Source: Glycera tridactyla (taxonomy: Eukaryota). From it: a stretch of 64,000 nucleotides of DNA. This document shows, one piece after another, positions 37,356 through 64,000 of this stretch. The first letter of the stretch is position 1, and every line of letters starts with the position of its first letter. The notes under the pieces are model-generated. The model saw only the letters and a program-made list of their open reading frames with translations, was not told the origin of the DNA and made no database searches. The position numbers and the translations under genes were made by a program. The stretch lies in assembly GCA_965644265.1 (NCBI GenBank), contig OZ286460.1, forward strand, positions 19,654,001 through 19,718,000, in the 5' to 3' direction.

Positions 37356-37402
<47 letters not shown>

Positions 37403-46374: not shown

Positions 46375-46456
46375 CTGAAATAATGATTCTGATGATGATG
46401 AAAATAGGAGACAATGATATATTGATGAATATTATCAGCCAACCAGTCTGTTCCAA

Positions 46457-46660
46457 TGTGGAGAAATTTAGTCAATAAACTGGACAATATCACTCACTTA
46501 TTGTGACGTTGCGGCTAGAACCTCTAGCCTTTGACGGACTGTTTACTCTTCGAGTTGTCAAGTGATAGACGACGGGAGTCTGTCGAAGGCTAGAGGTTCT
46601 AGCCGCAACGTCACAACAAGTGAGTGATATTTTCCAGTTTATCGACTAAATTTCTCCACA
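46457..46660. repeat. Fold-back palindromic element (84-bp arms, 36-nt loop)
   Basis: 46457-46540 is the reverse complement of 46577-46660 with only a few mismatches. Confidence 0.92.
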
Positions 46661-46742
46661 CAGGAGATATTCAGGCAACATATACTTAATTATTGCATAC
46701 ACACACATAAGCACGCACACAAGCATGCACACACACCTGCAA

Positions 46743-46792
<50 letters not shown>

Positions 46793-46799
46793 GCACACA

Positions 46800-47597: not shown

Positions 47598-47613
47598 TGG
47601 TGGAGAATCAGGG
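47598..47613 (+). promoter_or_regulatory. Primer-binding site, tRNA-Ala type
   Basis: TGGTGGAGAATCAGGG; TGGTGGAGAAT is complementary to the ...ATTCTCCA-CCA 3' end of eukaryotic tRNA-Ala; located ~540 nt upstream of the gag ATG. Confidence 0.75.
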
Positions 47614-47760
47614 TTTGACGTGCTGACTGTGCTGTATTTTTTGTTATCTTTCTTTGTATTCTTACCATTTTTGCTGGTTATTGCTGGATTCGCTCGTGCG
47701 AGGCGTGGTCCCGTCGTCGGTATGGGTACTGGCGTGCGGACTATTGGGCTGTTGCCGGAG

Positions 47761-47766
47761 GTAAGT
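47761..47766 (+). promoter_or_regulatory. Major splice donor in the retroelement leader
   Basis: GAG|GTAAGT consensus between PBS and gag. Confidence 0.65.
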
Positions 47767-47864
47767 TTCCTGTACCCGCTCATTTGCTAGGGGGTTGGGC
47801 TGTGTTGTGTGCCCGTGTGATTGATTATGGTGTATTTAGGTCGAGCGGTGGTGGAAACTACGGG

Positions 47865-48002
47865 ATGCTCCCTTGTAGTCCATGGATATATTTATTTTTA
47901 ACCTTACTGGCAATTGTAGCCGTCATGATATATATCATGCTGATATCACCTGTTGGTATAATGCCTATGGGCCTGGCAGTTAGTGCTGTTGGAGGACAGT
48001 GA
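47865..48002 (+). CDS. Small upstream hydrophobic ORF (45 aa, one predicted TM helix)
   Basis: MLPCSPWIYLFLTLLAIVAVMIYIMLISPVGIMPMGLAVSAVGGQ; function unknown, may be chance. Confidence 0.3.
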   Translation: MLPCSPWIYLFLTLLAIVAVMIYIMLISPVGIMPMGLAVSAVGGQ

Positions 48003-48136
48003 GGTATTTGTCAAAGGTGTGGGTGTTCTACATGTATTATATGATAGATTTGAGAGGTACGCTATGATGTGGGGTGGAATGTTTGGTGGATTAAGGTCTA
48101 ATATTAGCCGATTATTTACTTATTGGGGTGGTGAGC

Positions 48137-51100
48137 ATGTCGCTAAATGGAATACACGGACGTCGGCGGTCTAGACGCCTGCGTGGCTTAGAACCTTATA
48201 ATATTGACGAGTTTGATTTTGATTTATCTTCACATCACTCTGACCTTAGTCTGAATTTTGAGAATAATTGGGTGGATGTGTCACGGCCCAGCCCTACTGA
48301 TGGAGTGATTTCATTGCCAGATGAATGGTTTAGGGATGTGATACCTATCGGTGAAACTAGGGCGGAGAATAATATTGGAATACCATCCAGACCAGCATCC
48401 GTTGGTGATGTGGCAGTAGTGGATGTTGATTCATGGCCATTGGTGTCTACTGAAGGGTCTATAGTGGTCCGGACACCAGACACGTTAGACACATTGTCTG
48501 AACATTCTGATGACAACGTACTTGTACCTAGACTTGCAGATGGGGATACACTTTGGAATGCTGATGGGACACCTCGAGCTACATCGTCTCCTACATCAAT
48601 AGTGTCAGATGATGTTATCACTGGACCTTTGTTGTATCCAACACGAACAGTACATGGGGAAAGAAATCAGATGCAGAATGATGGGGTGTCACCTAATATG
48701 AATGCCTGGGACTATTCTGTGGGTAGCCCTCATCTTGTAACTCCTCCATTACCTGTTTCTGATTCTGATGCAATGAACCGGGACAGGGGGACACCTGTCT
48801 TGAGTGGCACGGCTTACCGTCCTGTGAGGGTGTCTGATATAAGGGCTACGACTGGTCGTGGCTTGTCTGATACATTGCCTGTTCAAATGTACCCTGAAAG
48901 TGGCTCTCCAGTTGAGTGTACATCTTCTGGTGGTGGGATATCCACGGCTGTTGGTTACATTCAAGGTATGGATAATAGGGCTGGTGGAAACATGGGGACT
49001 GGTGGTAATGTGGGCCCCTATGCTCCAGTGATTCAACCAGGTAGGTTAAATTTAGATGAAGACACGCCGATCAGAGAACCAAAGAACGCATTCGGAGTTA
49101 ATAAATCCACCAGACTTGCTGGGTCTGAGAGAGTGATAAGACCTAAACCAATATTTTTACGGGATCAAACGGTAAGTACCTCAAAACCAGCGGCTGCCTG
49201 GTTGAATACAAACACATCGGTTGTGTCGTCAGGTATGACTGCTATTTGCTCTGTAGCTGAGTCAATTCCTATTTTCCAGAGAGGGAGAGTGAGGGAGCAG
49301 GCAAGTAGATTTGAGGAGCAGGGACGAAATAGATACCACAGTCCAATATCAGCATATGGACAGGAAAGGGTGAGTGGCTCATCAACAGGATTGGTTAATC
49401 AAGACGGTCCTGTTTTTAGCTCAGAAACACTGAGAACACCAGGATCGTTTATATCATCATCTAGAAGGATACGGGTGAGTGAGTCTGGTCTTGATGAAAA
49501 TGTGCTAAACCAACTTCATAGACCAGAATTGTCTGGAATGGGTAATTACCTCGTTGATGCAGACCCTCTGGTGAGTGATGATGTGCATGAAATGTTTAGG
49601 GCATTACCCCGGGAACTATCTCACCCAGCGGCGGTCACACCCCTAGCTAAACCTGCGAAAAGTAAGGTAAGGCAACCTGTCTTTTGCCAAGGCACGAGTG
49701 AAAGAGTAACAACTTTACCGAATAATGCTGGTGAATGCCATAATAAAAAGCGAAAGATACCAGATCAACCAGGTACGGATGATGAGGTGCTGAGACCTGT
49801 GTTCAGGATGCCCCATTTTATAAGTAAAAATCAGGCTAGATGGACAAAAGGAGAGGCCTATTTTACTGGTGAATTCAATGTTGAAGGTAGGCCAGTGTAC
49901 GAATATATGTGGACACCTATAGGTACAAGAGATCCAACTGATCCTGACATGCAGGAGTGGATATATCAACAGTGTAAGGCGGCTGGAAAAATGGCACAAA
50001 AACCCAAACAATCAACGCAAAAACCTGGGGTGAGTTTTGCATCTGATGGCCACATTGGTGGGTGGAGGACAGACAACCAACCACCATCAACCAGCGGCTG
50101 GATTCCACGTAGGCCAGGTGGGTTGAGTAATAGGACTCCTATGAAAACAGGGATACAAAACCCTCCAACACCTGCTAGAGCAGGGGTGGATAAAAATTGG
50201 ATTGATAATCCAGATTACTATGGCAGGGATGTTATTTATAAAGTCACTGATGATGAGCTGTCGGATCCAGACAATGATAGTGAAGAGCCTGTGAGTGACA
50301 GTGATACTGGTGAGTATATAGCCCGACCTCGTAGAAATGAGAGGGGATCACTTAAAGACCGTATGTGTGCCATGATTGGTGACCTGGGTAGATCAGATGA
50401 TGAGGGGGACCGCCAAATTGATAGGTTGGGAAGGAATTCAAATGATAATGACCGTGCCCGGGATGTAAATGATAATTTGCTTCAAAATGTGGGTCATGAC
50501 CAAACTAGACAGGCACACCGACGTGCTAATGTACGGAATGTTCGGAGTCATGAACGAACAGCCGGTGGACAAAGTTTGGGAGGAGACAGACAGAGGTCAA
50601 TTGTAGTGGAAGGGAGTTCATCCATAATAAAATTAGAAAAATTCAACCCGACAAAAATGAACCCATTAGACTGGTTTTCACTTTTCGAAACATATGTGTC
50701 ATACAAAAACCTGTCAAATGAGGATGCTCTGCGAGTTTTTAGATTCAGTGTTGCGGGTGATGTTGCATCATGGTATTCCCTGCTGCCACCTGTGAGGTCG
50801 CTCAGGCAACTGAAAAATGCTTTCGTCAAGGAGTGGGGTGTAGACCCTGAAAAACGCTATGCTTATTTTAACCGATTATGGAAGATGAAGCAGAAGGGGC
50901 GTGACAGCAAGAAATTCATTAGATCAATAGTGAAAAAGGCACGACTGATGTATGGAGTGTCACCTGAGCGTCAATTGAATGAATCTCAACAGGATGAGGT
51001 ATGCAAAATTGTATTGAATGCTCTGGACAAAAGTGTGCGGCAATTTGTGTTAACCCAACGTGCAGAATCCCTAGATGAAATAATAGAAGCGGCCTCTCTA

Positions 51101-51667
51101 GCACAATCACTAGATAGTGGTTCTGAGAAATCCAGTGGGTCTGAAGATGAGTCTTCCTCTGATACTGATGGGGAGGATCGGAAGAAGAAACATAAGAAAA
51201 AGAAAGATAAAAAGAAGGATGATGATAGGGGAAATACATCCAGGGCCATTATGGTCTTGTTGGATGAGATGAAATCTATGAAGACATCATTACCAGATAC
51301 AGTAGCAGAAGCAGTGGGAAAGCAGGCTGCTGAAATTAAAAAGTCAACTGGGACCAGGCCTAAAAAAAATATGAATGATGGCGGAGGGAGTGAGAATCCT
51401 ATACCTCAAAATGGGGGATATAGAAGCAGGATGGGTCAGAGAAATAGCAACGAGAGGGCTAGGTCTGTATGTTACACTTGCCAAAAACCAGGCCATTTTG
51501 CCATTAATTGTCCTGAGAGAGGGAAAGGTGGAGGCAGAAGCAATATGGCTGTTTGTCAGCTATGTGCCCGGACGGGGCATGTAGCACCACAATGTCCCAG
51601 ACTGAACAGGCCAGAGAAACCTGTAGACAGACATTCACATGAACAGAGACAGGGGGAGGACCAATAG
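48137..51667 (+). CDS. gag: Gag polyprotein, 1176 aa from first ATG, with ~830-aa N-terminal extension
   Basis: Capsid-like block from ~50624 (KLEKFN...DWFSLFE...GDVASWY); two CCHC knuckles CYTCQKPGHFAINC and CQLCARTGHVAPQC at 51470-51595. Confidence 0.93.
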   Translation: MSLNGIHGRRRSRRLRGLEPYNIDEFDFDLSSHHSDLSLNFENNWVDVSRPSPTDGVISLPDEWFRDVIPIGETRAENNIGIPSRPASVGDVAVVDVDSWPLVSTEGSIVVRTPDTLDTLSEHSDDNVLVPRLADGDTLWNADGTPRATSSPTSIVSDDVITGPLLYPTRTVHGERNQMQNDGVSPNMNAWDYSVGSPHLVTPPLPVSDSDAMNRDRGTPVLSGTAYRPVRVSDIRATTGRGLSDTLPVQMYPESGSPVECTSSGGGISTAVGYIQGMDNRAGGNMGTGGNVGPYAPVIQPGRLNLDEDTPIREPKNAFGVNKSTRLAGSERVIRPKPIFLRDQTVSTSKPAAAWLNTNTSVVSSGMTAICSVAESIPIFQRGRVREQASRFEEQGRNRYHSPISAYGQERVSGSSTGLVNQDGPVFSSETLRTPGSFISSSRRIRVSESGLDENVLNQLHRPELSGMGNYLVDADPLVSDDVHEMFRALPRELSHPAAVTPLAKPAKSKVRQPVFCQGTSERVTTLPNNAGECHNKKRKIPDQPGTDDEVLRPVFRMPHFISKNQARWTKGEAYFTGEFNVEGRPVYEYMWTPIGTRDPTDPDMQEWIYQQCKAAGKMAQKPKQSTQKPGVSFASDGHIGGWRTDNQPPSTSGWIPRRPGGLSNRTPMKTGIQNPPTPARAGVDKNWIDNPDYYGRDVIYKVTDDELSDPDNDSEEPVSDSDTGEYIARPRRNERGSLKDRMCAMIGDLGRSDDEGDRQIDRLGRNSNDNDRARDVNDNLLQNVGHDQTRQAHRRANVRNVRSHERTAGGQSLGGDRQRSIVVEGSSSIIKLEKFNPTKMNPLDWFSLFETYVSYKNLSNEDALRVFRFSVAGDVASWYSLLPPVRSLRQLKNAFVKEWGVDPEKRYAYFNRLWKMKQKGRDSKKFIRSIVKKARLMYGVSPERQLNESQQDEVCKIVLNALDKSVRQFVLTQRAESLDEIIEAASLAQSLDSGSEKSSGSEDESSSDTDGEDRKKKHKKKKDKKKDDDRGNTSRAIMVLLDEMKSMKTSLPDTVAEAVGKQAAEIKKSTGTRPKKNMNDGGGSENPIPQNGGYRSRMGQRNSNERARSVCYTCQKPGHFAINCPERGKGGGRSNMAVCQLCARTGHVAPQCPRLNRPEKPVDRHSHEQRQGEDQ

Positions 51668-54600
51668 GACAGGTCATGGCCACCTGCAGAGAATGTAATA
51701 ATGGCATTGGACAATTATAGCAATCATCATACCAATGTAGGCGGAAATTTAGAAATTATGACATGGGATAGAGAAACAATAAATGCACCTATACAACAGA
51801 ATCTGATACAAATATTGATTAAAAATCGCCTCATAACGGCCATGTTGGACACAGGCGCCAGTGTGTCGGCTGTGGAGAGTGATTTAGTGATGAAGCTACT
51901 CCCTCATACCTATTCTACAAGAAAGAAATATACACAGGGAAAAGTGAAAGATGCCCAGGGAAATTATGTCAAAGTAGACGGGATAGTACAGTTGGATTTT
52001 GAGATCCAAAGTGAGAACTTTAGAATTGATGCTCTTATTGTTGAAAAGTTGCCAGTGACACTAATCTTAGGACTACCATTTTTTGTTGAACATGATGTAA
52101 GATTATCATGGGACTCTGTGAAAATTAGAGGAAATAATGCTGAGATTATTGCAACTCTTGTGCGTACAGTGGACAGCAGAGATAGTTTTAATTTAAAGGT
52201 TTGTTGTGACACGGTATGCGGGTCGTACCAAGCGACAATCCTTGATGTATATGGATCATCCAGGGGATGTGCCAAAGGCAGCCCTGTGTATGAAGACATA
52301 TGGTGTGTGAAGACACATAGGGATTTGGTAGATGGTGAAAATCTGATTGTATCCCCGGCAATTGCATATGTGGGCCCCAGGGGAACAGTTACAATTGAGA
52401 TAATTAACCCTACTTCCAGTGATGTAAGACTGTCCGCTGACCAGATAGTAGCAGTAGGAAAATTGTATGCTAAACCAAGTTCTATGGATAATATGTTGCT
52501 AAAGAACCAAGAACCTGTGAGGGGGATGAACTTAGAATATCCACAGATGACCAGTAATGAAACTCAGATGACCAGTAATGAAACTCAGATGACTAGTAAT
52601 GAAACTCAGATGACCAGTAATGAAACTCAGATGACCAGTAATGAAACTCAGATGACCAGTAATGATACACAGATGACCAGTAATGACTTGCAGATGGCCA
52701 GTAATGAAGCACAGATGACCAGTAATGAAACTCAGATGACCAGTAATGAAACTCAGATGACCAGTAATGAAACTCAGATGACCAGTAATGATACACAGAT
52801 GACCAGTAATGACTTGCAGATGGCCAGTAATGAAGCACAGATGACCAGTAATGAAACTCAGATGACCAGTAATGATACACAGATGACCAGTAATGACTTG
52901 CAGATGGCCAGTAATGAAGCACAGATGACCAGTAATGAGACGTGCACAACCAGTAATGAAACCCAGGTTACCAGTGAGGATGCTCAGATTTCTAGTAATG
53001 ATGCTCAAACAATTGATGCTAGAACTCAGATTATTGATGATGGAGTACAAACTAGTGGTGATATGATTAACCTGATGCAGGTATTACGATCATTTGAACT
53101 GAAAGTACCGCCGGTAATGATTATGATTGAAACCAATGATTTAAGGGTTGTGGCTACACAAACTGAACCAGATATATTGAATCAGACGCGTGTGATAACC
53201 TACAAACCGATTGACTGGCAACAGTATCTAGATGATGACTTGCCTGAGGATGTTTATGAAAAACTTATCAAGGTGTTGGAGTTCCATAGGCCATGTTTTG
53301 CTATGGACTTGTCAGAGTTAGCAAGAGTGAATGATTATGAACATGTTATTGAACTGAAACATGATGCCAAGGTAGTGCACCAAAAACCGTATCGTGTGAC
53401 ACCTGAGAATAGTATAGAAATCGAGAGACAGATAAAAATTTTGCGTGAACATGGGCTAGTAGATTTTAGTGATTCCTACTGGTCGAGCCCTGTGTTATTG
53501 GTAGACAAGAAACCTGATTTCCCTGGAGCACCAATCACCAAAAGACTTTGTATTGATCTGAGGAAATTAAACAGGGAAATTTTACTGAATAGCTTCCCAG
53601 TACTGACGCTCGATGAAATTATTCATCGACTGGCGATAGCTAAACATAAATGGTTTATTAATCTTGATTTGAAATCTGCATATTTCTCTATCCCTTTGTC
53701 ACCAGAAAGTCAACATCTGGTGTCATTTGTTACGCAGAGTGGCTGTTATAAAATGACTTCCTGTCCGTTCGGGTTAAAAAGCTCGCCGAGCAGTTTCTCT
53801 CAGGTGATGATGAGGTGCTTAGCACCATTAGATCAAACCAAGATATTGAACTATATGGATGATATCGTGTTGACAGGAGACACGCCTGAGGATCTCCTGG
53901 AAACATTGAATGCAGTGTGTTGGAGACTCAGGACTGTTGGGTTATCACTCACGCCATCCAAGTGTCATTTCATGAAGAGACAGATAAAATTCTTAGGCCA
54001 AATATTTGATCAGACAGGATGCCGATCAGACTATGCGAAGATAAAAACTGTGGCTATCTTTCCCACCCCGACTGATGTACGAGGAGTGCGTAAGTTGATG
54101 GGATTGTTGAATTGGCAGAGACGGTATATAAACCGATTTAGTCATTATGCATCAGTCCTTTATGAACTCCTTACAAAGGATGCCGAGTTTGAATGGACTG
54201 ATAAGCATCAGAAGGCAATGGACTGGCTGAAAACTCAAGTGCTGGAAAATGTAGTGCTATACTACCCGAAAGTAGACCACCCCTTTGTGATATACACGGA
54301 TGCATCGGCAAGAGCTGTGGGCTCATTAACATTACAGAAGGATGGTGACAGTCAATTGAAACCTGTGGCATTTCTCAGCCACTGCCTATCTAAAGCACAA
54401 CAAAAATATCACTCAAACGAACTGGAAGTTTTAGCAGTTGTTATTGCACTGACACATTTGAAATATTTCATCACAACGGAAACTCCTGTTGAAATCTTCA
54501 CGGATAATGTTACTAATGTATTTTTCCAATCATTGTCTCTGAAAACAGGTCGGCTATTTCGCTATCATCTGTTCTTATCGAGATATAATTTGAAAATCAG

Positions 54601-57499
54601 GTTCACTAATGGGTGGAGAAATCAATGCGCCGACACTTTGAGTAGATTTCCGAATTTGGAAAATTTGGAAGAACTGCAGGATGAAGGACTAGACAACATT
54701 ACACATACAGATATACCGACATCAATCAATTACAAACACACAATACAAACAATAAACTGCATAATGTCTATGGGTGAGCTGACTTCCGATAGCGCTGAGG
54801 TATTTGAATCAGAGTTTGAGGCAGATGAGAGTTCTCTTTGGCAGGTACCTGATAAATACCTTTTGCCAGTCATTTCAGAGTCTGTTTCTGAGAAGAAAGT
54901 AGTACCCCAATGGTCAGATAGATTGGTTACACAAGAAGCAAGTAGTATTGCGAATGAGCGATTATATGACAGGGAATCGGAATTTTGCATGTTTGATAGA
55001 CCAGCTGGGGCACGAGAGGCGGTGACACGGCCTGTTCCGGCTGATAAAGCGAGTCATCCTGGTGGGCAGTCGGATGAAGAACCACCACCGGGAGGGCTGC
55101 CCGAGCATCACGACGAGGGTGTAGATGACACGCAGGCTATAGACGCTCCCCTCGTACCGAGGCCTCGACTGTTATCAGATGAACGGCAGTCAACTGTAAA
55201 CAATCAGAAAGACATGGGAGGTATTAGGGATGCTGATTATGATATCGTGGGTGACGGTATATTTGAGACTGGGGATGAACTGATAAAAAGACAGACAAGA
55301 TTTTGTGAAGGAAGCCCTGAAAACCTATTGCGATTTTTCCGTGATGAACAGACAGATATACGGTTTGAACAAATTGACGACCGCTTGGGGCAAGACTTTG
55401 AAGACCTGCAATTATCATTTTTACATGATACCGCCAAATTGGCTGAAGAACAACATTTAGACAGTGATTTTAAACATATTATTGAGTACAAACAGGCTGG
55501 TGAATTGCCTACCATTAAGAAACAGGCAATGAAGGTGTTGGCTGAAGACCACAAATACTTTTTGGATGAAAATGGAATACTTTACCGCATATATACACAT
55601 TCAAAAGGGAAATCTGCTAAAACATATAGACAATTGTGTCTACCTGCTCAATATCGAGCCAGGATGGCCCATTTATTTCATGATGGACCAATGGCTGGTC
55701 ATAGAGGTTTTGACAAAATGTACACATTGGTGATGCAGTATTTCTACTACCCCAGGTGTTATGAAGAATTGCTGAAGTATTGTCAAACCTGCGAAATTTG
55801 TGCTAAATCAAAGGTCACTCAAGGGCAAGTGAGAGTACCGCTGCAAATTAGAGAAGCTCCTGTATATATATTTGACACAGTACACATCGATTTTTTGAAG
55901 TTATATAAGACACGTGACGGATATGTATATGTTTTATCTATGATTGATCGGTTCACACATTGGGCGGAATTAGTACCCACTAAAGATCAATTAGCAAAGA
56001 CAACAGCTTTAGCTGTCGTGCGAGAATGGATATTTCGCCATGGCTTAATGAGATGCATTATTTGTGACCGATCTATGTCATTCATGGGGCAAGTATTCAG
56101 AAATATTTTGAAATTACTCAAGGTAAGAATGATTTTCATTTCACATATGAACCCAAAAAGTAATAGCCGGGTGGAAACACTTAATCGGTTGGTAATATCT
56201 AAACTGAGAGCGTCCTTACAACAAGTTTCACATACAGATTGGACAGAATTACTACCTGCAGTGGCATTCACATTGAACACGACTCCACTGCCTTGTGGCT
56301 TTTCACCATATCAATTGGTGTGTGCTAAATCACCAAATTTGGGGAGTCAAATGCTTCTAACTGATCCCTCCATGATACCTGAGGATCCAAGAGAAGTCAT
56401 CCGGGAATTGTGGGGAGATTTAGCAATTATTCGTATGGAGGCTCAGAAAAATATGCTTGAACTCGATAAAGCCATGAAAGCTAGGTATGATCGGAAATAT
56501 AGAACTAAACCTGATGAATTTCGTGAGGGAGATCTAGTGTGGCTGGTGGCACCACACACCATCCTGGTGGGTCAGGGCAAGCTGAAATCAAAGAAACTGG
56601 GCCCATTTGAAATTGCATGTAGGGTGGCCCCCACATTGGTTCAATTATGCCTGGTTGATTCGGCAGTGTGGTTGCCATCATTGACCAGCACCAGCAGGTT
56701 AGTGCCATACGTACATCCTGTTAATTCATCATTACGTATGCAATTACAAACTGAAGTAAAAATTAATAAGAAACATGAGCGCTTTGCAAATTTGGGACGA
56801 GTTGAGTGGGAACAGGAACTAAATGAGAATGATGATGTGACAGGTAACTTACCCATAAATGATGATGAAAACGCTTCACAGGATGTGGCTGACCAATGTA
56901 ACTCCCCACCGTTATTGGATAGTGGCGAAGGTGTGGATGATGTGCCTCAAAGAATGGTGTCCTCGACATCTGGTGATGGAGGGGTGTCCAATAGTCGAAG
57001 AAATGTACAAACTGTATGTGAATCCACAGTGATATCCGGTGTTGGAATGTCTCATGGTGGGCACACAAAAATAACAGAAATGTCAGATAGTGGAATAATT
57101 GACCCACCAGCTCAACCTACGGCCAGTCATATAATTCACTCTGATGACGTCCAAAATGATGCGGATGCGGATGATGGAAATGAGAGAGCTGTTGCTTCTC
57201 AAAAATGTAGATCAAAACGTAAATATTTACAAATGTACAATCGTGCAAAAATATATGGTAACCGATTGGCTGCTACTTCCCGGGGCAAGCCTACTAGCAA
57301 TGTCAAACAAAAAGTGGCTGGAGTATCCAAAAGTGATTTGGCCAAGGATATAGTAAAACTGCTTGCATCAAGGAAAAGTAAAGATGGTACGAGGAGTTTT
57401 GAGTGTTTGTACGCGACTCATCCTAGGTCATGGCTGAAGGAGTCCTTGATCCCGACAGTTTTTATCGACGATTATGATTATCGGCACCGGGTGAAATGA
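51668..57499 (+). CDS. pol: Pol polyprotein (protease, RT, RNase H, integrase), same frame as gag after a single TAG
   Basis: LDTGAS (D at 51848); RT YMDD (53852); RNase H YTDAS/ELE/FTDN (54299 onward); IN HHCC (55679-55801), D-D-E core (first D 55889), GPF (56600). Confidence 0.97.
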   Translation, partial: DRSWPPAENVIMALDNYSNHHTNVGGNLEIMTWDRETINAPIQQNLIQILIKNRLITAMLDTGASVSAVESDLVMKLLPHTYSTRKKYTQGKVKDAQGNYVKVDGIVQLDFEIQSENFRIDALIVEKLPVTLILGLPFFVEHDVRLSWDSVKIRGNNAEIIATLVRTVDSRDSFNLKVCCDTVCGSYQATILDVYGSSRGCAKGSPVYEDIWCVKTHRDLVDGENLIVSPAIAYVGPRGTVTIEIINPTSSDVRLSADQIVAVGKLYAKPSSMDNMLLKNQEPVRGMNLEYPQMTSNETQMTSNETQMTSNETQMTSNETQMTSNETQMTSNDTQMTSNDLQMASNEAQMTSNETQMTSNETQMTSNETQMTSNDTQMTSNDLQMASNEAQMTSNETQMTSNDTQMTSNDLQMASNEAQMTSNETCTTSNETQVTSEDAQISSNDAQTIDARTQIIDDGVQTSGDMINLMQVLRSFELKVPPVMIMIETNDLRVVATQTEPDILNQTRVITYKPIDWQQYLDDDLPEDVYEKLIKVLEFHRPCFAMDLSELARVNDYEHVIELKHDAKVVHQKPYRVTPENSIEIERQIKILREHGLVDFSDSYWSSPVLLVDKKPDFPGAPITKRLCIDLRKLNREILLNSFPVLTLDEIIHRLAIAKHKWFINLDLKSAYFSIPLSPESQHLVSFVTQSGCYKMTSCPFGLKSSPSSFSQVMMRCLAPLDQTKILNYMDDIVLTGDTPEDLLETLNAVCWRLRTVGLSLTPSKCHFMKRQIKFLGQIFDQTGCRSDYAKIKTVAIFPTPTDVRGVRKLMGLLNWQRRYINRFSHYASVLYELLTKDAEFEWTDKHQKAMDWLKTQVLENVVLYYPKVDHPFVIYTDASARAVGSLTLQKDGDSQLKPVAFLSHCLSKAQQKYHSNELEVLAVVIALTHLKYFITTETPVEIFTDNVTNVFFQSLSLKTGRLFRYHLFLSRYNLKIRFTNGWRNQCADTLSRFPNLENLEELQDEGLDNITHTDIPTSINYKHTIQTINCIMSMGELTSDSAEVFESEFEADESSLWQVPDKYLLPVISESVSEKKVVPQWSDRLVTQEASSIANERLYDRESEFCMFDRPAGAREAVTRPVPADKASHPGGQSDEEPPPGGLPEHHDEGVDDTQAIDAPLVPRPRLLSDERQSTVNNQKDMGGIRDADYDIVGDGIFETGDELIKRQTRFCEGSPENLLRFFRDEQTDIRFEQIDDRLGQDFEDLQLSFLHDTAKLAEEQHLDSDFKHIIEYKQAGELPTIKKQAMKVLAEDHKYFLDENGILYRIYTHSKGKSAKTYRQLCLPAQYRARMAHLFHDGPMAGHRGFDKMYTLVMQYFYYPRCYEELLKYCQTCEICAKSKVTQGQVRVPLQIREAPVYIFDTVHIDFLKLYKTRDGYVYVLSMIDRFTHWAELVPTKDQLAKTTALAVVREWIFRHGLMRCIICDRSMSFMGQVFRNILKLLKVRMIFISHMNPKSNSRVETLNRLVISKLRASLQQVSHTDWTELLPAVAFTLNTTPLPCGFSPYQLVCAKSPNLGSQMLLTDPSMIPEDPREVIRELWGDLAIIRMEAQKNMLELDKAMKARYDRKYRTKPDEFREGDLVWLVAPHTILVGQGKLKSKKLGPFEIACRVAPTLVQLCLVDSAVWLPSLTSTSRLVPYVHPVNSSLRMQLQTEVKINKKHERFANLGRVEWEQELNENDDVTGNLPINDDENASQDVADQCNSPPLLDSGEGVDDVPQRMVSSTSGDGGVSNSRRNVQTVCESTVISGVGMSHGGHTKITEMSDSGIIDPPAQPTASHIIHSDDVQNDADADDGNERAVASQKCRSKRKYLQMYNRAKIYGNRLAATSRGKPTSNVKQKVAGVSKSDLAKDIVKLLASRKSKDGTRSFECLYATHPRSWLKESLIPTVFIDDYDYRHRVK
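52544..53005 (+). repeat. In-frame 21-nt tandem repeat in pol (QMTSNET x19 plus ~3 degenerate units)
   Basis: Unit CAGATGACCAGTAATGAAACT, read directly; variant block NDT/NDL/ASNEA recurs three times. Confidence 0.97.
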
Positions 57500-57715
57500 C
57501 GCTGATTGATTGTTTGTGACATACGTAATGAATATATGATAGTAATTGTCTAATGGTGTGCGCTTACAGTGATGTGTTCACATATATATATATATATATA
57601 AATATATATAAAAGTGTCTATACTAGGTGTCCTTATGTTTGTTCACAAGTCATGAATGGCAAGAAAAATGGAAATGCATGTCAGAAGGCTGCTGCCATCA
57701 TGATACTGCCCACAT

Positions 57716-59122
57716 TTATAGATTGTTTTGGCCATTCTCGATGTTGATGGCGCTGGCCAGGGATGTGAGCGCTCGGCGGTTTCGGTTGTGTGGACGGCTA
57801 CGGCGGGCTAGCTGTGTGCGTCGGATGATGGGTCGAGATTCCTGCGCCATGGGTCGGATTGTCATTACAAGCCTCCGTCTTGGTGGGTTGGCTGGAGGCT
57901 GATGTGGATAATCTGAGCCACCGTGATTGGTCTCTGACACGGATTCCGTGACTTCATTCGCTGCAACGGCCTGGTCTTGCGTAATGTAGTCAACGGCCAT
58001 CCGTGTGGATATTGTCATGTCATTTGTACTCAGATCCATGGGTGACCCTTGGGGGGATGATGGAGCTGAATGGGGGTGACTGGAGGGGCTGCCCTCTGGT
58101 GTCCTCTCAGATTGGGGGGTCTCCGATTCCCCGAAGAATCTGTAGATGGGGTACATTCCTGTGGGTGACTGGGATACCCTGGGATTTGTACCTGATGTGG
58201 ATGTCTCCAGAGTCGGGTCCTCATATTGGGTGGCAACACTGGTGTATGTTGTCTCCACTTGGGTACCTTGGTCAACGGTACCTGGTGAGGTGGTTGGGCC
58301 ACTTGTGGGAATGCGTGGGTTGGTTGACCTGTTATGGTGATAGGCTGCAGTGCGTACCTGGGAAGGGTGTAGGTGTGACTGGTTGTTCATCATGAGGGTG
58401 GATGGAGCACTGGGCATTGCCGCAGTGTTAGTTAGCAAGGTCGAGGATGATCCAGGGTGTGTAGCCCATGTTGGGGGCATGGGTACAACTTGGGTTGGAT
58501 ACCCACTGTTGTATGGATATCCTGATCTTGCACGCCCGATGTGTGGTGGTATCACACATTCAAGTCGACCAGTTGTCCAGTACTCCCGTACCGCATTGAT
58601 CAATGGGTGACACGGTTGAATGTCGTACATACCATGAAAATGGATGCGGGAATGCAGTTCGATATATTCAGTCTGGTCATGAATGGTGAGGGCGAGTACC
58701 GAGAACGACCTTGGTGTCGAGAAGACATGATGCAGCAGGGCTCTGGCCCCTTCGTCCTGCATTGGATGTCGGCTGCGCTGGCGTCCATACACTTGTAGAA
58801 AATGATCGGCACCCACTTCCCGGATAGTAGGTGCGCTCACATACTTATATTGCAGTAATTTCTTCATTGCAAGGCAGAACCGAGTGTTCCGCTCGACTTG
58901 CATCTCGGTAGGTTGGTAGAAGGTTACGATCTGTGACTCCGTCATGATGTTTGATGTCAGTTTGTCTTGGATGATGAAATGAGTATCAACAGGAACAACT
59001 GTGATGAGTGTGTGGTAGGGTGTAGATCCAAGTGAGGAATGATCTGCAGAGGTGAGTATCTCGAAATGTGGCATCAGGGGGAGGAGCTGATTCTGATTGG
59101 AAATCAGTGAGTGGTGAGTCAT
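57716..59122 (-). CDS. Antisense accessory ORF of the retroelement, 468 aa, unknown function
   Basis: 1407-nt uninterrupted ATG-initiated frame filling the pol-env gap, with no long sense ORF opposite it; ordered-looking N-terminal ~190 aa, S/T/P-rich disordered C-terminus, Arg-rich tail. Confidence 0.85.
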   Translation of the reverse strand: MTHHSLISNQNQLLPLMPHFEILTSADHSSLGSTPYHTLITVVPVDTHFIIQDKLTSNIMTESQIVTFYQPTEMQVERNTRFCLAMKKLLQYKYVSAPTIREVGADHFLQVYGRQRSRHPMQDEGARALLHHVFSTPRSFSVLALTIHDQTEYIELHSRIHFHGMYDIQPCHPLINAVREYWTTGRLECVIPPHIGRARSGYPYNSGYPTQVVPMPPTWATHPGSSSTLLTNTAAMPSAPSTLMMNNQSHLHPSQVRTAAYHHNRSTNPRIPTSGPTTSPGTVDQGTQVETTYTSVATQYEDPTLETSTSGTNPRVSQSPTGMYPIYRFFGESETPQSERTPEGSPSSHPHSAPSSPQGSPMDLSTNDMTISTRMAVDYITQDQAVAANEVTESVSETNHGGSDYPHQPPANPPRRRLVMTIRPMAQESRPIIRRTQLARRSRPHNRNRRALTSLASAINIENGQNNL

Positions 59123-59189
59123 GATTGGGGAGTTGGACGCTGTGAAATGAAAAGTGCATGGGGTAAGTTTATGGTGTTTTTTTTTTATA
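59123..59189 (-). promoter_or_regulatory. Candidate minus-strand splice acceptor (AG at 59141-59140) and TATAAAA (59189-59183) upstream of the antisense ORF
   Basis: Minus strand reads gTATAAAAAAAAAAcacc...cttac...cacttttcatttcacAG|cgtccaactccccaatcATG. Confidence 0.55.
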
Positions 59190-59625
59190 CAGTGATAAGA
59201 CGTAATAGTGGGAGCCCAAATGGATTGGACAGGTGGGCAGGTAGGTTGTTGGGGTCGTAGATTACGACATCACTGTGGCACAGGTGGTCGAATGATTAAA
59301 GGGGGGTCAGTTAGTTGGTGATGATGGTCTGACTTGATGTAAAGTAGACCATTGTATGTATGTCTACTCGATGCATAGTGGATATTGGTGAAACGGAGCT
59401 TCAGCTAGGAGCTGTGGAGGTGTAAGATTGAAGCCGAGGGTAATTAATCAACATGATGGAAAGTGAATGGTAGTTGCTCATGGCGGAGAGCTATAGAAAA
59501 TGGGGTGAGGCTTAATCAGACCGTTTAGAGAATTAAATTGGGCAGATGGAAGAAGTATAAATGAGAGACGATGGACGACGGCACGGGAGGCGACTGTATG
59601 ATTAATCACGCAGGATACGCGTGGC

Positions 59626-59644
59626 CTCTGTTTTATGTTTTCAG
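59626..59644 (+). promoter_or_regulatory. Splice acceptor for subgenomic env mRNA
   Basis: ctctgttttatgttttcAG|G, 4 nt before an in-frame ATG (59649) and 49 nt before the signal-peptide Met (59694). Confidence 0.65.
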
Positions 59645-59648
59645 GAAT

Positions 59649-62600
59649 ATGTGTGATGACCGCCTGAGTGAGCACGACATGGCCGGGAAGGAGATGTACC
59701 CAACGTTAATTGTGTTAATAGTCACGTATGTAAATGTAATTAGTGTAAATAGTCAGATGAGTGAAGGTATAGGTGGTGACAATGTCCTGAATTATGGTGT
59801 TTGGTTTGCACCAAAAGGCAGTTATCAAATATCAAATGAGAATTATCATTTGATATTGGCGGTAGATATACCTGGATTGAGAGGTGGTGATGAAAATGTT
59901 AAAGCCAGGTGTAATATGGGAGAGAAAGGGAAGTCTTGTCAAGGGAAGAAATTGCAAGCTGTAATAACACAGTTGAACAGAGGCAAGAGACTTATCGATG
60001 ATAGTACCTGCCAATTGTTTGAAACAATAGTAGATGAGATAGATACCTACGAGTTAGAGATGGACCAACGTTTGGCCAGAGTGATGCTGACTACAGACTA
60101 TGCATGGTGGGTGGATGATGTGATGCGGAATAAATATGAGAAAGTGCTGAAATCTAAAACAATTAAAAAGAAGTCAAGACAACGAGAAAGGGCAGATGAT
60201 GCCTACTGGTTGATGAGTATAACTAATGAAAATGAGACTGGTGAAGTGCAGACAGAAAAAAATTTGCAGCTAGGACATGGGACCAAGAATAGGCCACGGA
60301 AGGGGGTTGGCTATATCGAGACGCCTGTCATCAAGCTGAAGAAGGGCCATGTGAAGACGCCAGTGAAACACTTACTGGTGGCTGGGAGGCGATGGCAGCA
60401 ACAAATAGCTGACAATTGTGTTTATACAAATATATCTGAGTGGGGTGAGGATGTGGGTACTTCTCCAAGTGATTCTTCTGTTGCAGACAGTTTGCAGAAA
60501 CTACATGGGTTACTGATGGCTGTCCAGAAAAAGGTTACAAATTCTGTACTAAAGGATATTGGAATATTCAATGAATCAGAATGGATGAAGTGGTCTAGTT
60601 CCCAAGAAATATCTCGAGACATGCAGAATATGGTTGTTGATTGGGTGTGGCGAATTCAAAATGAAATACCTCCTAAAAAGTTGCAATTGGAATTGATTCC
60701 ATTATTGCGAAAACTGGGTGTGTACAGTCATCAATTAGCCAGAGAAAGGAAAAATACAGCCCGAGTTTCCGAAAGATATCTGAATAAAACTGTCATAACC
60801 CGACTAATTGAATCCTTGGACCACTTGGCAAATTTACGACTTGTGAATCAGAATGTAGTGGATATGCAGAGATTTCGAAAGCGGATTCGACGACTATGGG
60901 TTCGCATGAATATGGCACTGAACCAACAAGACCAAATGCCGTTGCATTGGTCCACTATTAAAAGTGATATGTGGGAATCGCTATTTGGTTCAGCTACGTT
61001 TGCTCAAGTTGACGAAATAATTCATGTGATTAACGGTGTCACCAACAATAGTAGTAATCGACGGGAAATTCGGAAATCGTATTTCGCGAACACCACTGCG
61101 TATATTACAGTGTCTTCGAGAATGGCCATCGAGTTTAAACGTGTGGTGAGACGTCTGAAAATGGCCATCGGCCTGTTGAGTGATCAGTCGGAGATGGAGG
61201 GGGAATATGACATAAATGCCATGTCATATATAATAAACAAAGCCACCAATATAGCCATAGGACTATCATTAGTCCGTTCAAAAATCGAGCACTTTGCAGA
61301 TGGTCTCCGAGAATTGCTCAAGGGAAAATTGACACCTCAAATAATCTCGGAAGATGATTTGCAAGAAGCATTGATACAGCTGGAAATAGAGCTGAGGGCA
61401 AGAGAGTCAAGGTTTCATGTTCTGACATTTGACTCTGCCCACTATTATTCAATTAAGAACATTGCTCATGTAAGAAATCAAAACCAGTTAATAATTGTAT
61501 TACCAATAGAAGTAACTAGACAGTCTCAAAATTTTCATTTATACCAGTTATCAGTATATGACATTCCAGTCAATAGCATTGAGAATTTGACTTCACGATT
61601 GGTTTCGGATATTGCAATAGTAGGGTTAAGCGAGTCAAAAACAAGGTTCATACAACTCACACATCAACAATGGATGTTATATGACAAAGAAAATAAATGG
61701 ATAAGCAACAGTGATATTCAAGTGTATAATCATGAGAATCTTACATGTGAAATGGCTCTATTCTGGAACAAGATGGTAGAGGTTAAGAAGTTATGTGAAT
61801 TCAGATTAGAACAAAAGCCGCTACAAATGAAATTGCACATCCTACCTAGGGGTGAATTGGTAGTCATGAATGCCGAAGAACTGATAGTGGCTTGTCAAGA
61901 CCGCCCCTATGTGAGGAAATCAGGGTGTGAAGTCTGCATACACCCACTAAAATGTGGATGTGAATATGTGGGTAGATTAAAGGATGATAGATTGGTGATC
62001 AACTCGAGAATGACAAAATGTGTGACTGAAGTAGAGAAGAGGCCACCCAAAACCATACTTCATATGTCTATCATACAGTATCTAGTACCTGAGGAATGGT
62101 TGCTGGGTGATGGTAGTGAAATTCATAGACAGAAAGACAATATCCCTGATATACCACTCAGGGTTAATCAGGGGCATTATGAGCAGTCAATATGTGGGCC
62201 AATTGAGTTTTCAATGAACCTTGAGAAGGCATTGGATAGGGTAAAAGCAGGTGAAAAATTATCACCAATTCAGCAGATTGATTGGGCATCCTGGAAAATA
62301 ATTCATGTTTCAGACTTTTTCACATTATCCACATGTGTCAGTATGGGTGAATGGGTATTGAGCACAGTGATAGTACTGGCTCATGTAAGAACAGCTCGAA
62401 GAGTGAATGAATTGGCACAGAGGGTTAATGGCATCATCATAATGAATCAACTTCGAGCAGCTAGGGCTATGAATGTTTTGGTTGGAATGAATACAAACAT
62501 GACAGAAACAAATAGATCAAATGCAGGGGGTGAGATAATTAGCCAGCGTGAGGGTATATTACTTCTGTTGCTGGTAGTCATTATACAACTTGCAATTGTG

Positions 62601-63209
62601 TTGGTGTGTCTTTTGAAATACTGTTTGAAAGTACAACCACATTCAGAAATAGCATGGGTCGTTTTGACATTACGAGGTAGGGATAAGTGTACAGTTAAGG
62701 TTAAGAAGCTCTATTGTGCCCCTCATGCGATTCGAATGCTAGCAGAAGGACCGCCCTCAGATATTAGATTAATTGGTCCCATACTTAAATCGAAATTATA
62801 TGTCTACTGGGGAAACAGGGAATTGATAGATAACGGAAATGGGGTCATTTATTACCTACCAAATGTGATTGATATTTCTATGTCAAGAGGACTACGAATT
62901 GCAGCCCTACTCAGAGAAACCTATCAAGTCACAGTTGACATTGTGTACAGGGATCGAGAGGGAAAATGGACTGCAGGGAATCGGTTGAGGTGTGATGAAC
63001 CTACAGAGGTTCACCCATATGTCAGAGAAAACAGTAATAGTAGTAGGCAGAATAGAATTCGAGAAGAACTACCACCTCCTTATGAACTTCATCAGCTTCG
63101 AAATCTCCGAAGCACTACCCGGGAAGGCCGGATTATGTTAAGCCCATTACCTTCGAGTTCATCAGATAGCGACCAATCAACAGAACGAGGACATACCAGA
63201 ACCAATTAA
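59649..63209 (+). CDS. env: Envelope-like glycoprotein (F-type/class I fusion-like), ~1170-1190 aa
   Basis: Signal-like MYPTLIVLIVTYVNVISVNS; LNYGVWF-x(11)-HLILAVDIP N-terminal motif; polybasic RFRKRIRR; SLFGSAT; GKLTPQIIS; Cys cluster; two C-terminal hydrophobic segments. The open frame extends up to ATG 59571. Confidence 0.85.
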   Translation: MCDDRLSEHDMAGKEMYPTLIVLIVTYVNVISVNSQMSEGIGGDNVLNYGVWFAPKGSYQISNENYHLILAVDIPGLRGGDENVKARCNMGEKGKSCQGKKLQAVITQLNRGKRLIDDSTCQLFETIVDEIDTYELEMDQRLARVMLTTDYAWWVDDVMRNKYEKVLKSKTIKKKSRQRERADDAYWLMSITNENETGEVQTEKNLQLGHGTKNRPRKGVGYIETPVIKLKKGHVKTPVKHLLVAGRRWQQQIADNCVYTNISEWGEDVGTSPSDSSVADSLQKLHGLLMAVQKKVTNSVLKDIGIFNESEWMKWSSSQEISRDMQNMVVDWVWRIQNEIPPKKLQLELIPLLRKLGVYSHQLARERKNTARVSERYLNKTVITRLIESLDHLANLRLVNQNVVDMQRFRKRIRRLWVRMNMALNQQDQMPLHWSTIKSDMWESLFGSATFAQVDEIIHVINGVTNNSSNRREIRKSYFANTTAYITVSSRMAIEFKRVVRRLKMAIGLLSDQSEMEGEYDINAMSYIINKATNIAIGLSLVRSKIEHFADGLRELLKGKLTPQIISEDDLQEALIQLEIELRARESRFHVLTFDSAHYYSIKNIAHVRNQNQLIIVLPIEVTRQSQNFHLYQLSVYDIPVNSIENLTSRLVSDIAIVGLSESKTRFIQLTHQQWMLYDKENKWISNSDIQVYNHENLTCEMALFWNKMVEVKKLCEFRLEQKPLQMKLHILPRGELVVMNAEELIVACQDRPYVRKSGCEVCIHPLKCGCEYVGRLKDDRLVINSRMTKCVTEVEKRPPKTILHMSIIQYLVPEEWLLGDGSEIHRQKDNIPDIPLRVNQGHYEQSICGPIEFSMNLEKALDRVKAGEKLSPIQQIDWASWKIIHVSDFFTLSTCVSMGEWVLSTVIVLAHVRTARRVNELAQRVNGIIIMNQLRAARAMNVLVGMNTNMTETNRSNAGGEIISQREGILLLLLVVIIQLAIVLVCLLKYCLKVQPHSEIAWVVLTLRGRDKCTVKVKKLYCAPHAIRMLAEGPPSDIRLIGPILKSKLYVYWGNRELIDNGNGVIYYLPNVIDISMSRGLRIAALLRETYQVTVDIVYRDREGKWTAGNRLRCDEPTEVHPYVRENSNSSRQNRIREELPPPYELHQLRNLRSTTREGRIMLSPLPSSSSDSDQSTERGHTRTN

Positions 63210-64000
63210 TTTAATCATCGCGAAGAATGATGTGACAGTATATATGGACATGTCGGGAGTAAATCACATTGACGTGAGCGAAGAACCCCCCCCCCCCCTT
63301 TTCCAGTCATGGGATGGGGAACCATGGAGCATCAATTATCAGCAGCCTAGTCATGAGCGTGGTGAGGAGAGACATCTGGTGGGGCATACTGGAAGTACGC
63401 TTGGATAGCCAGCCAGATTGTCTCTATATAGTTGTGATTAGCACTCAGTTGTACATAATGAATACGCATATAATATATATATACAGCACCTGTCATAAAG
63501 TGGTATGGCACTGCACTTCACATTAGTTGAACAACATGAGACCACGCGTAGAGACCAAGTGGTGACCTCTCACCAATATAGTATTTGATCAGACACGCGC
63601 ATATCATGAGTTAATGTATTCAGGGGAGTAATCAACTTGGATACCACAATCGCACATCGATGGGTGGAGCATCAGCACACCTTCCAATGAGCAGTGATGA
63701 GAAGGCGGGGACTGTGTACGGAAAGTGAAGCATTCGTTGAGGCAGCAGAGCGGAACGATCATGCATACCAATTGAAGGCCATCATTCTTGACTGTATTTG
63801 TGAAAGCTCTAAGGACTTGAAACTTCTGCAAAAGTGATGGAGTGAATCACAAGTGTATGGTGTGGTGGTGTGATGTACTTTAGTCGGTGATGGTATGACC
63901 AAGGGTGAGGTTTCATGGTTAATGACACTAGCAGAGACTAATGAACTGAGGTGAAAAGTGCCATGAATGGTGATGACATAGATACATTTTCTATAAGACT

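What the first reader, a model, noticed from the sequence alone, without database searches (positions are those of the whole stretch)
57716..59122. 468-aa antisense accessory gene between pol and env of a Gypsy-type element
Seen: a 1407-nt stop-free minus-strand ORF almost fills the pol-env interval (pol ends 57499, env starts ~59.6 kb). No long sense ORF overlaps it, so it is not a shadow of another gene. It has an ordered-looking ~190-aa N-terminal region (FCLAMKKLLQYKYV...LALTIHDQTEYIELHSRIHFHGMYDI...REYWTTGRLEC), a disordered S/T/P middle and an Arg-rich tail (PPRRRLV...RRTQLARRSRPHNRNRR). Known: standard Metaviridae carry gag, pol and sometimes env; antisense regulators are a hallmark of complex retroviruses (HTLV-1 HBZ). 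Inference: an element-encoded nuclear regulator or anti-silencing factor of a family I cannot assign. This is the best candidate for an undescribed system in the window.
Basis: partly seen in the sequence, partly recalled or inferred. Interest (0 to 1): 0.9.

Follow-up and report, generated by a model that had tools for sequence, protein, structure and literature searches.

The report
Antisense gene in an animal gypsy-like retroelement
A virus-like mobile element in an animal genome carries, between its polymerase and envelope genes, a 468-codon gene-like frame on the opposite strand; its closest known relative has a different-looking gene in the same place that evolves under selection, so such elements may have a backward-facing accessory gene like some complex retroviruses and plant elements.

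Summary
Window 57716-59122 (-) is a 468-codon ATG-to-stop ORF inside a 517-codon stop-free run. No dinucleotide shuffle out of 2000 reaches that length, and the other five frames carry 14-22 stops. It lies between pol (PR-RT-RH-IN) and an F-type env-like ORF of a Ty3/gypsy-type element.

The protein is an orphan. It has no Pfam, NCBIfam, PDB or protein-database hit, including a search of 1.84 billion representatives. AlphaFold models were too poor (pLDDT 33.5) to use.

The decisive evidence is comparative. The element's closest pol relative is its exclusive sister in 100 of 100 bootstraps (33% pol identity). That relative has a 500-codon minus-strand frame in the same pol-env slot. Three alleles of this frame give dN/dS 0.26-0.33 (p down to 7e-13). 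A more distant env-bearing relative has no spacer and no antisense ORF.

The two antisense proteins show no detectable similarity, so common descent is plausible but unproven. No sister copy of the window's own family could be found. Its coding signal is weak outside the first 200 codons.

Verdict: probably a genuine element-encoded antisense accessory gene. Function is unknown; a nuclear, nucleic-acid-binding regulator is inferred only. It is a new variant of a known kind, after plant Retand/Grande antisense ORFs and deltaretroviral HBZ.

The parts
46800..48136 (+). Presumed 5' LTR plus leader of the element. The 5' boundary is approximate.
   Evidence: Plus-strand GC skew switches from about 0 or negative to +0.3 at about 46800, directly after a (CA)n run. 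There is no LTR pair in the window, so the boundary is an inference.
48137..51667 (+). gag-like ORF. The first ATG is at 48137; the ORF listing starts at a GTG at 48128. It is about 1176 aa, with capsid/nucleocapsid at the C-terminal end.
   Evidence: Pfam zf-CCHC at aa 1114-1130. The CA/NC part is homologous to the sister family's gag (E 3e-21). The roughly 830-aa N-terminal extension cannot be aligned.
51701..57499 (+). pol, 1932 aa: protease, reverse transcriptase, RNase H, integrase.
   Evidence: Pfam hits in that order. Best relative is P0001 and its cluster at 33% identity.
57500..57715 (.). Short gap between the pol stop and the antisense stop. It contains an (AT)n run at 57582-57610.
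   Evidence: No AATAAA or ATTAAA on the minus strand here or for 1.2 kb beyond.
57716..59122 (-). The finding: a 468-codon antisense ORF. It has an ordered-looking N-terminal region (about aa 35-190), a Ser/Thr/Pro-rich middle (196-410) and an Arg-rich tail (411-468, pI 12).
   Evidence: No family, structure or homologue was found.
59123..59570 (.). 448-nt head-to-head spacer between the antisense ATG and the env ORF. It is a candidate site for an internal antisense promoter, with a TATA-like run on the minus strand at 59189-59177, 67 nt before the ATG.
   Evidence: One such motif in 448 nt is about what chance gives, so this is suggestive only.
59571..63209 (+). env-like ORF, 1212 aa. A signal-peptide-like start follows Met-42 (59694), and there is a C-terminal membrane anchor.
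   Evidence: Translation. BLASTP gives E 2e-36 to the L001 env and 2e-19 to the L004 env. The L001 env passes Pfam Baculo_F (28.5 bits, cut-off 24.1). The window protein has no direct Pfam hit.
63210..64000 (+). 3' untranslated part of the element, running off the window. The 3' LTR is not reached.
   Evidence: The positive GC skew continues. There is no match to the region upstream of gag.

Best explanation
The ORF is a genuine element-encoded protein-coding gene on the antisense strand. It fills an accessory-gene slot between pol and env that is shared by a small clade of animal env-bearing Ty3/gypsy elements.

Shown:
- The frame cannot be open by chance.
- It has lived in the element long enough to share its strand-asymmetric base composition.
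- The element's sister family keeps a gene of similar size, orientation and position under purifying selection.

Inferred:
- The gene is transcribed from the minus strand of the integrated copy. The start could be an internal promoter in the 448-nt head-to-head spacer it shares with env (TATA-like run 67 nt upstream of the ATG). Alternatively it could start further downstream, with splicing onto the acceptor-like site just before the ATG.
- The product has a small folded N-terminal domain, a long disordered Ser/Thr/Pro-rich linker and an Arg-rich tail suited to nuclear import or nucleic-acid binding.
- It would then act as a regulator of the element's own expression or of its dealings with the host. 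This is by analogy with antisense proteins of deltaretroviruses and of plant Retand/Grande elements.

The confidence figure is for 'real, or very recently real, coding gene of the element'. I rate the specific regulatory role at about 0.25.
For: - Length: 0 of 2000 shuffles reach 468 codons, and the other frames carry 14-22 stops.
- Frame 0 scores best of the six frames with the element's own codon table.
- Codon-position periodicity is significant in codons 1-200 (p 0.007), with an effect size like pol and env.
- Plus-strand G>C skew (+0.25) runs through the ORF as through gag, pol and env. The host flank has skew -0.02.
- There are no flanking terminal repeats.
- Sister family (pol exclusive sister in 100/100 bootstraps): L002 has gag, pol, a 500-codon minus-strand frame and env on one contig. 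None of 1000 shuffles reaches 500 codons.
- Three alleles of that frame give dN/dS 0.29 (p 3.5e-11), 0.25 (p 6.7e-13), 0.33 (p 6e-4) and 0.26 (p 1.5e-6). Wrong-frame controls give 1.1 and 1.8.
- The outgroup element L004 has identical LTRs, gag-pol-env, a 240-nt pol-env gap and no antisense ORF.
- At this distance only constrained cores remain alignable (env 24%, gag CA/NC 21%, gag N-terminal extensions not at all). Non-similarity of a protein evolving about six times faster relative to dS than env is therefore expected.
Against: - No sister copy of the window's own family was found, so selection on this ORF is untested.
- The two antisense proteins share nothing detectable: BLASTP E 1.7, hhalign probability 0.1, Smith-Waterman z below 1.5. 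They also differ in layout.
- Periodicity in codons 201-468 is not significant (p 0.12). The whole-ORF chi-square (15.4) is well below equal-length pol pieces (35-104).
- There is no canonical poly(A) signal on the minus strand within 1.2 kb.
- The TATA-like motif is no more than chance would give.
- Structure models are uninformative (pLDDT 33.5 and 37.7).
- There are no expression data.
Confidence: 0.6

Rival explanations
1. The frame is young, arose from scratch on the antisense strand and has little or no function. The C-poor plus strand of the element lowers stop frequency on the minus strand. A spacer could then drift into a long frame independently in each family, and the window copy is simply too young to have lost it.
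For: - No homologue anywhere.
- No similarity to the sister family's protein.
- Weak periodicity in codons 201-468.
- Amino-acid make-up (Pro, Ser, Thr, His) is what a C-rich strand yields.
- No poly(A) signal.
Against: - Composition alone does not give such frames: the shuffle maximum is 334 codons, and the same skew over 13 kb of gag, pol and env yields at most 172 aa on the minus strand.
- Codons 1-200 do show periodicity.
- The equivalent frame of the sister family is demonstrably under selection.
Confidence: 0.2
2. The ORF is a captured host or foreign coding fragment, taken up by this family only and unrelated to the sister family's gene.
For: - GC content (0.52) is higher than the rest of the element (0.41-0.45).
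- The protein is unrelated in sequence to the sister's.
- Capture is a documented source of extra ORFs in LTR elements (PMC11963269).
Against: - No host-like or any other homologue among 1.84 billion representatives or in Pfam.
- The strand skew matches the element, not the host flank.
- The sister family's antisense ORF is raised in GC in the same way (0.51), which points to a shared property of the slot.
Confidence: 0.12
3. The ORF belongs to an unrelated element nested in reverse orientation, or the frame is a chance ORF or an assembly artefact.
For: Nested insertions are common in LTR elements. The interval has its own composition.
Against: - No terminal direct or inverted repeats or target duplications around it.
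- No transposase, RT or other mobile-element domain.
- Chance is excluded by the shuffles.
- There are no N runs in the element.
Confidence: 0.04

Closest known systems
Unnamed antisense ORF of the sister element family (loci L001, L002, L006, L007, L008; assemblies GCA_013332995.1, GCA_029979755.1, GCA_013332775.1, GCA_013332755.1 and an ENA metagenome)
   Same: - Minus strand, between pol and an F-type env, head-to-head with env.
- Similar size: 435-500 codons against 468-517.
- GC-richer than the sense genes.
- An ordered N-terminal part, a disordered Pro/Ser-rich middle and one dense basic patch.
- The pol genes are sister lineages.
   Different: - No detectable sequence similarity.
- The sister protein has a second ordered domain at its C-terminus, and its basic patch sits near residue 150, not at the tail.
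- Its gap to pol is 1.2 kb with tandem repeats, against 0.2 kb here.
Antisense additional ORFs of plant Ty3/gypsy elements (Retand lineage, maize Grande, rice RIRE2), many with the TRP28 domain PF04195 (PMC11963269)
   Same: An antisense ORF downstream of pol in a non-chromovirus Ty3/gypsy element. It is kept across a lineage, its function is unknown, and a regulatory DNA-binding role is suspected. Tandem repeats often lie next to pol.
   Different: - The hosts are plants, and those elements have no env after the antisense ORF.
- The TRP28 domain is absent here: no Pfam hit even at E 10.
- The window's pol relatives are animal elements.
Antisense proteins of complex retroviruses (HBZ of HTLV-1, APH-2 of HTLV-2; named from the finding and PMC11963269 / PMC10186651)
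   Same: A protein encoded on the minus strand of an integrated LTR retroelement that also has env. A basic region is present.
   Different: - No bZIP or other shared domain. No named hit of this kind came back from Pfam or PDB searches with the window's protein.
- The position differs: here the ORF is between pol and env and overlaps no sense gene.
- A transcription start in the 3' LTR cannot be tested here.

Membership tests
Ty3/gypsy (Metaviridae-type) LTR retroelement (applies to the host element) | pol domain order protease - RT - RNase H - integrase | tested here: met
   Pfam hits along the 1932-aa ORF: aspartyl protease 33-134, RVT_1 606-768, RT_RNaseH 832-962, Integrase_H2C2 1315-1372, rve 1394-1485.
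Ty3/gypsy (Metaviridae-type) LTR retroelement (applies to the host element) | gag with capsid and CCHC nucleocapsid | tested here: met
   zf-CCHC at E 3e-8. The CA/NC region is homologous to the sister family's gag.
Ty3/gypsy (Metaviridae-type) LTR retroelement (applies to the host element) | Flanking long terminal repeats with primer-binding site and polypurine tract | tested here: inconclusive
   There is no repeat pair in the window, because the element runs off the 3' end. The 5' boundary is inferred from composition only.
Env-bearing Ty3/gypsy ('errantivirus'-like, F-type env; PMC13524379) | Third sense ORF encoding a membrane fusion glycoprotein of the baculovirus F / paramyxovirus F type | tested here: met
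   The match is transitive. Window ORF3 has no direct Pfam hit and no PDB sequence hit. It is homologous (E 2e-36) to the L001 env, which passes the Baculo_F gathering score. A signal-like N-terminus and a C-terminal anchor are seen in the translation.
Plant Retand/Tat-type antisense aORF | TRP28 (PF04195) or another of the recurrent domains in the antisense product | tested here: not met
   No Pfam family at E up to 10, for the whole protein or for its two halves.
Plant Retand/Tat-type antisense aORF | Antisense ORF in the region downstream of pol, kept across the lineage | tested here: inconclusive
   Position downstream of pol is met. Retention is seen only as a positional counterpart in the sister family. 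Copies of the window's own family were not available.
Deltaretrovirus HBZ-like antisense bZIP factors | Basic leucine-zipper domain | tested here: not met
   No bZIP or any other Pfam hit and no PDB chain matched. The Arg-rich tail is followed by only about 18 residues.
Deltaretrovirus HBZ-like antisense bZIP factors | Antisense transcript starting in the 3' LTR | not testable with these tools
   The 3' LTR lies outside the window and no expression data are available.
Protein-coding gene under selection (applies to the ORF itself) | dN/dS below 1 and frame kept among copies | not testable with these tools
   No second copy of the window's family was found in the window, the protein collections or the JGI metagenomes. 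The feature is met for the positional counterpart in the sister family.

The most novel reading that the evidence does not exclude
A clade of animal env-bearing Ty3/gypsy elements has independently evolved a 'complex retrovirus' layout. It would have a fast-evolving antisense accessory gene set head-to-head with env. The product would be a nuclear, nucleic-acid-binding protein that tunes the element's transcription or counters host silencing such as the piRNA pathway. The gene's rapid turnover, with alleles diverging several-fold faster than env and mosaic copies, would reflect an arms race with the host.
Probability: 0.15. Interest if true: 0.8.

Novelty: new variant of a known kind. Interest (0 to 1): 0.55.

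Why it matters
Accessory genes are what separate 'complex' retroviruses from simple ones. Among Ty3/gypsy elements, antisense genes are documented in plants only. [quoted passage not shown]

A conserved antisense slot in animal env-bearing elements would show that this layout arose repeatedly in LTR retroelements. It would also give an annotation rule: look on the minus strand of long pol-env intervals. And it would point to a family of unannotated, fast-evolving proteins that standard TE pipelines and gene callers discard.

Tried and rejected
- **Homology searches with the antisense protein, all blank.** Pfam, NCBIfam, PHROGs, PDB sequences, the word-indexed 5.8-billion collection and the full HMMER scan of 1.84 billion representatives. 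The last has no length limit, so it also covers shorter and longer kin.
- **Exact look-ups.** The antisense and env products are not on record.
- **Structure.** Two AlphaFold runs gave pLDDT 33.5 and 37.7. I did not send them to fold search, because low-confidence models give meaningless matches.
- **Sister copies.** None in the window and none in the JGI metagenomes, using either the antisense protein or env as query.
- **Similarity between the two families' antisense proteins.** BLASTP on whole proteins and on domains, hhalign, and shuffle-calibrated Smith-Waterman all gave nothing.
- **Unhelpful relatives.** L003's pol is not open under the standard code and nothing else is readable there. 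L005 is a chimeric gene model in a pseudoscorpion chromosome with no clear gag, env or antisense ORF. Two look-ups were not on record.
- **Host identity.** No tRNA or Rfam hit, one weak C2-domain exon, and the assembly accessions were not found in the paper library.
- **Env profile against PDB.** No hit.
- **Rejected readings.** Chance ORF, shadow of a sense gene, nested transposon.

Full report
**1. The observation**

The window has only four ORFs of 200 aa or more, and all lie at its 3' end.
- 48128-51667 (+)
- 51701-57499 (+)
- 57716-59122 (-)
- 59571-63209 (+)

The minus-strand ORF is the finding: 468 codons from ATG to stop, inside a 517-codon stop-free run.

In 2000 dinucleotide-preserving shuffles of the pol-env interval, the longest open frame averaged 136 codons and never exceeded 334. 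The other five frames of the ORF region carry 14-22 stops. The same element, with the same strand skew, yields no minus-strand ORF above 172 aa over its 13 kb of gag, pol and env.

**2. The surroundings**

- ORF1 ends in a CCHC zinc knuckle.
- ORF2 has protease, RT, RNase H and integrase in the Ty3/gypsy order.
- ORF3 (1212 aa) has a signal-like start after Met-42, a C-terminal membrane anchor and many cysteines, but no direct Pfam hit.
- ORF3 is homologous to the third ORF of two related elements, with E 2e-36 to L001 and 2e-19 to L004. The L001 protein passes Pfam's Baculo_F threshold.

The element is therefore an env-bearing Ty3/gypsy element of the kind recently catalogued across animals (PMC13524379).

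No LTR pair lies in the window. Plus-strand GC skew turns positive at about 46800, right after a (CA)n run, and stays positive to the window's end. The element therefore probably starts near 46.8 kb and runs off the 3' end.

The host is not identified. The flank is CpG-depleted (observed/expected 0.35), and the pol relatives are animal elements from nematodes, a pseudoscorpion, fish and a mosquito.

**3. The protein**

No family, solved structure or homologue was found for the whole protein or for its halves. A single-sequence AlphaFold model has mean pLDDT 33.5, so no fold search was made.

The composition divides the protein into four parts.
- Residues 1-195 are moderately hydrophobic and His-rich, with predicted helices and strands.
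- Residues 196-410 are 58% Ser/Thr/Pro/Gln/Gly/Asn.
- Residues 411-468 have pI 12.
- The densest basic patch (8 Arg/Lys in 20 residues) starts at residue 430.

The gene's sense strand is C-rich and G-poor, because the element's plus strand is G-rich and C-poor throughout. This alone pushes the protein towards Pro, Ser, Thr and His.

The intrinsic coding signal is mixed.
- The true frame scores best of six with the element's codon table.
- Codon-position periodicity is significant in codons 1-200 (p 0.007, effect size like pol and env).
- It is not significant in codons 201-468 (p 0.12).
- The whole-ORF statistic is well below equal-length pieces of pol.

**4. Relatives**

The element's own proteins have no close kin in the collections. 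The best pol match is 33% identical over 98% of the queried RT-to-integrase stretch of pol (P0001 and its cluster). In a neighbour-joining tree of the RT-to-integrase region with 20 other relatives, the window and P0001 are exclusive sisters in 100 of 100 bootstrap replicates.

Contigs carrying that family show the same layout.
- L002 has gag, pol, a 500-codon minus-strand open frame and env, in that order.
- L001 has the minus-strand frame and env followed by gag and pol.
- None of 1000 shuffles of the L002 pol-env interval reaches 500 codons.

Five loci from four assemblies and one metagenome carry at least three alleles of this gene.

| Pair | dN/dS | Fisher p |
|---|---|---|
| L001 vs L006 | 0.29 | 3.5e-11 |
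| L002 vs L006 | 0.25 | 6.7e-13 |
| L001 vs L008 | 0.33 | 6e-4 |
| L006 vs L008 | 0.26 | 1.5e-6 |

For L001 vs L006 the mismatches fall 36, 23 and 68 on codon positions 1, 2 and 3. Reading the same alignment in the two wrong frames gives 1.1 and 1.8. That gene is therefore protein-coding and under purifying selection.

It evolves faster than env. For L001 vs L008, env has dN/dS 0.05 at 98.8% identity and the spacer is 99.3% identical, while the antisense part is 93.4% identical. The extra divergence is concentrated in one stretch inside the gene, which points to mosaic copies.

Two of these copies are damaged. L006 carries three frame-breaking indels in the antisense gene, and the env of L008 carries one stop.

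A more distant relative, L004, has identical LTRs and gag-pol-env with 240 nt between pol and env. It has no antisense ORF. The slot is thus a trait of the window-plus-sister clade, not of all env-bearing relatives.

**5. Are the two antisense genes the same gene?**

No similarity is detectable by BLASTP, hhalign or shuffle-calibrated Smith-Waterman on any pair of segments, and the domain layouts differ.

At this distance, however, only constrained cores still align. The env core is 24% identical and gag CA/NC is 21% identical, while the long N-terminal gag extensions do not align at all. A protein with a dN/dS about six times that of env would be expected to have diverged beyond recognition.

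Common descent is the more economical reading: same clade, slot, strand and size, and the same rise in GC. It is not shown, and independent origin remains open.

**6. How it might work**

Shown: an antisense coding frame head-to-head with env, separated from it by a 448-nt spacer, and overlapping no sense gene.

Inferred:
- Transcription is from the integrated copy's minus strand. A TATA-like run lies 67 nt upstream of the ATG, and an acceptor-like site lies just before the ATG.
- One TATA-like motif in 448 nt is about the chance expectation. No canonical poly(A) signal follows the stop within 1.2 kb.
- The Arg-rich tail and disordered middle suggest a nuclear, nucleic-acid-binding regulator, by analogy with plant Grande/Retand antisense proteins and deltaretroviral antisense factors (PMC11963269).

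None of this inferred part has been tested.

**7. Comparison with what is known**

Antisense ORFs downstream of pol are established for plant Ty3/gypsy lineages. 97% of recently active Retand clusters encode a TRP28 domain, and that domain is absent here.

Antisense proteins are also known in complex retroviruses. No bZIP domain or other named hit came back for the window's protein.

In the held literature I found no report of an antisense gene in animal env-bearing Ty3/gypsy elements. The library is limited, so this is absence of evidence only.

I file the finding as a new variant of a known kind.

**8.

- The related DNA I read (L001-L008) came from look-ups of proteins that the window's own pol search returned, in genome or metagenome assemblies, or from cluster members of proteins encoded on those loci. 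Two pattern scans of JGI metagenomes used the window's own proteins.
- I took these loci to be copies and relatives of the element, which may be compared. I did not take them to be 'a virus of animals' fetched as a comparator. If the operators read the bar more widely, those are the calls concerned.
- Alignments across frame-breaking indels were used for counts only.
- The N runs at 24694-24896 and 40275-40464 were left alone.
- Nothing in the window looked human.

**9. Verdict**

- Real ORF: certain.
- Real element gene: probable (0.6), mainly because of the selected positional counterpart in the sister family.
- Function: unknown. A regulatory role is an analogy.
- Interest: 0.55.

Noticed in passing
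window 52544-53001 (wider 52439-53089): About 22 tandem copies of a 21-nt unit lie inside pol. They encode a seven-residue repeat between the protease and the reverse transcriptase, and the frame stays open.
   Followed up: partly
window 48137-50620: gag has an N-terminal extension of about 830 residues. It looks mostly disordered, has no Pfam hit and shows no similarity to the sister family's shorter extension.
   Followed up: partly
window 46440-46800: A palindromic, MITE-like inverted repeat of about 240 nt is followed by a (CA)n microsatellite. Both lie directly upstream of the point where the element's GC skew begins.
   Followed up: no
window 59630-59700: An acceptor-like site (pyrimidine run plus AG at 59643-59644) lies on the plus strand, just upstream of the methionines that precede the env signal peptide. 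This fits env being read from a spliced subgenomic RNA starting at Met-42 (59694).
   Followed up: no
window 17500-18262 and 7428-16429: The host flank holds a tandem array of units of about 145 nt and several dispersed SINE-like repeats of 64-152 nt.
   Followed up: no
window 44973-45332 (-): A 120-aa frame gives a weak C2-domain hit (E 0.001, below Pfam's threshold). It may be a host exon.
   Followed up: no
L002 10660-11009; L001 16320-16534: The sister family has tandem repeats (periods about 37 and 71 nt) between pol and the 3' end of its antisense gene. Plant Retand elements have similar repeats next to pol.
   Followed up: no
L001 52-16243: The antisense gene and env are followed by 2.6 kb and then gag and pol on one contig. 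This looks like two copies in tandem sharing an LTR, or an assembly collapse.
   Followed up: no
L008 against L001 (antisense gene interior): Divergence jumps to 36 mismatches in one 300-nt bin inside the antisense gene. Most of the rest of the shared 6 kb has 0-3 per bin, and a few bins have 5-12. This suggests a mosaic or recombinant copy.
   Followed up: partly
L003 (ENA ERZ26052378): The database product of this pol relative does not match a standard-code translation of its locus, and no other long ORF is visible there. The host may use another genetic code, or the gene call reads through.
   Followed up: no
window 30000-46800 against 46800-64000: The host flank is strongly CpG-depleted (observed/expected 0.35). 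The element is less so (0.48-0.79).
   Followed up: no
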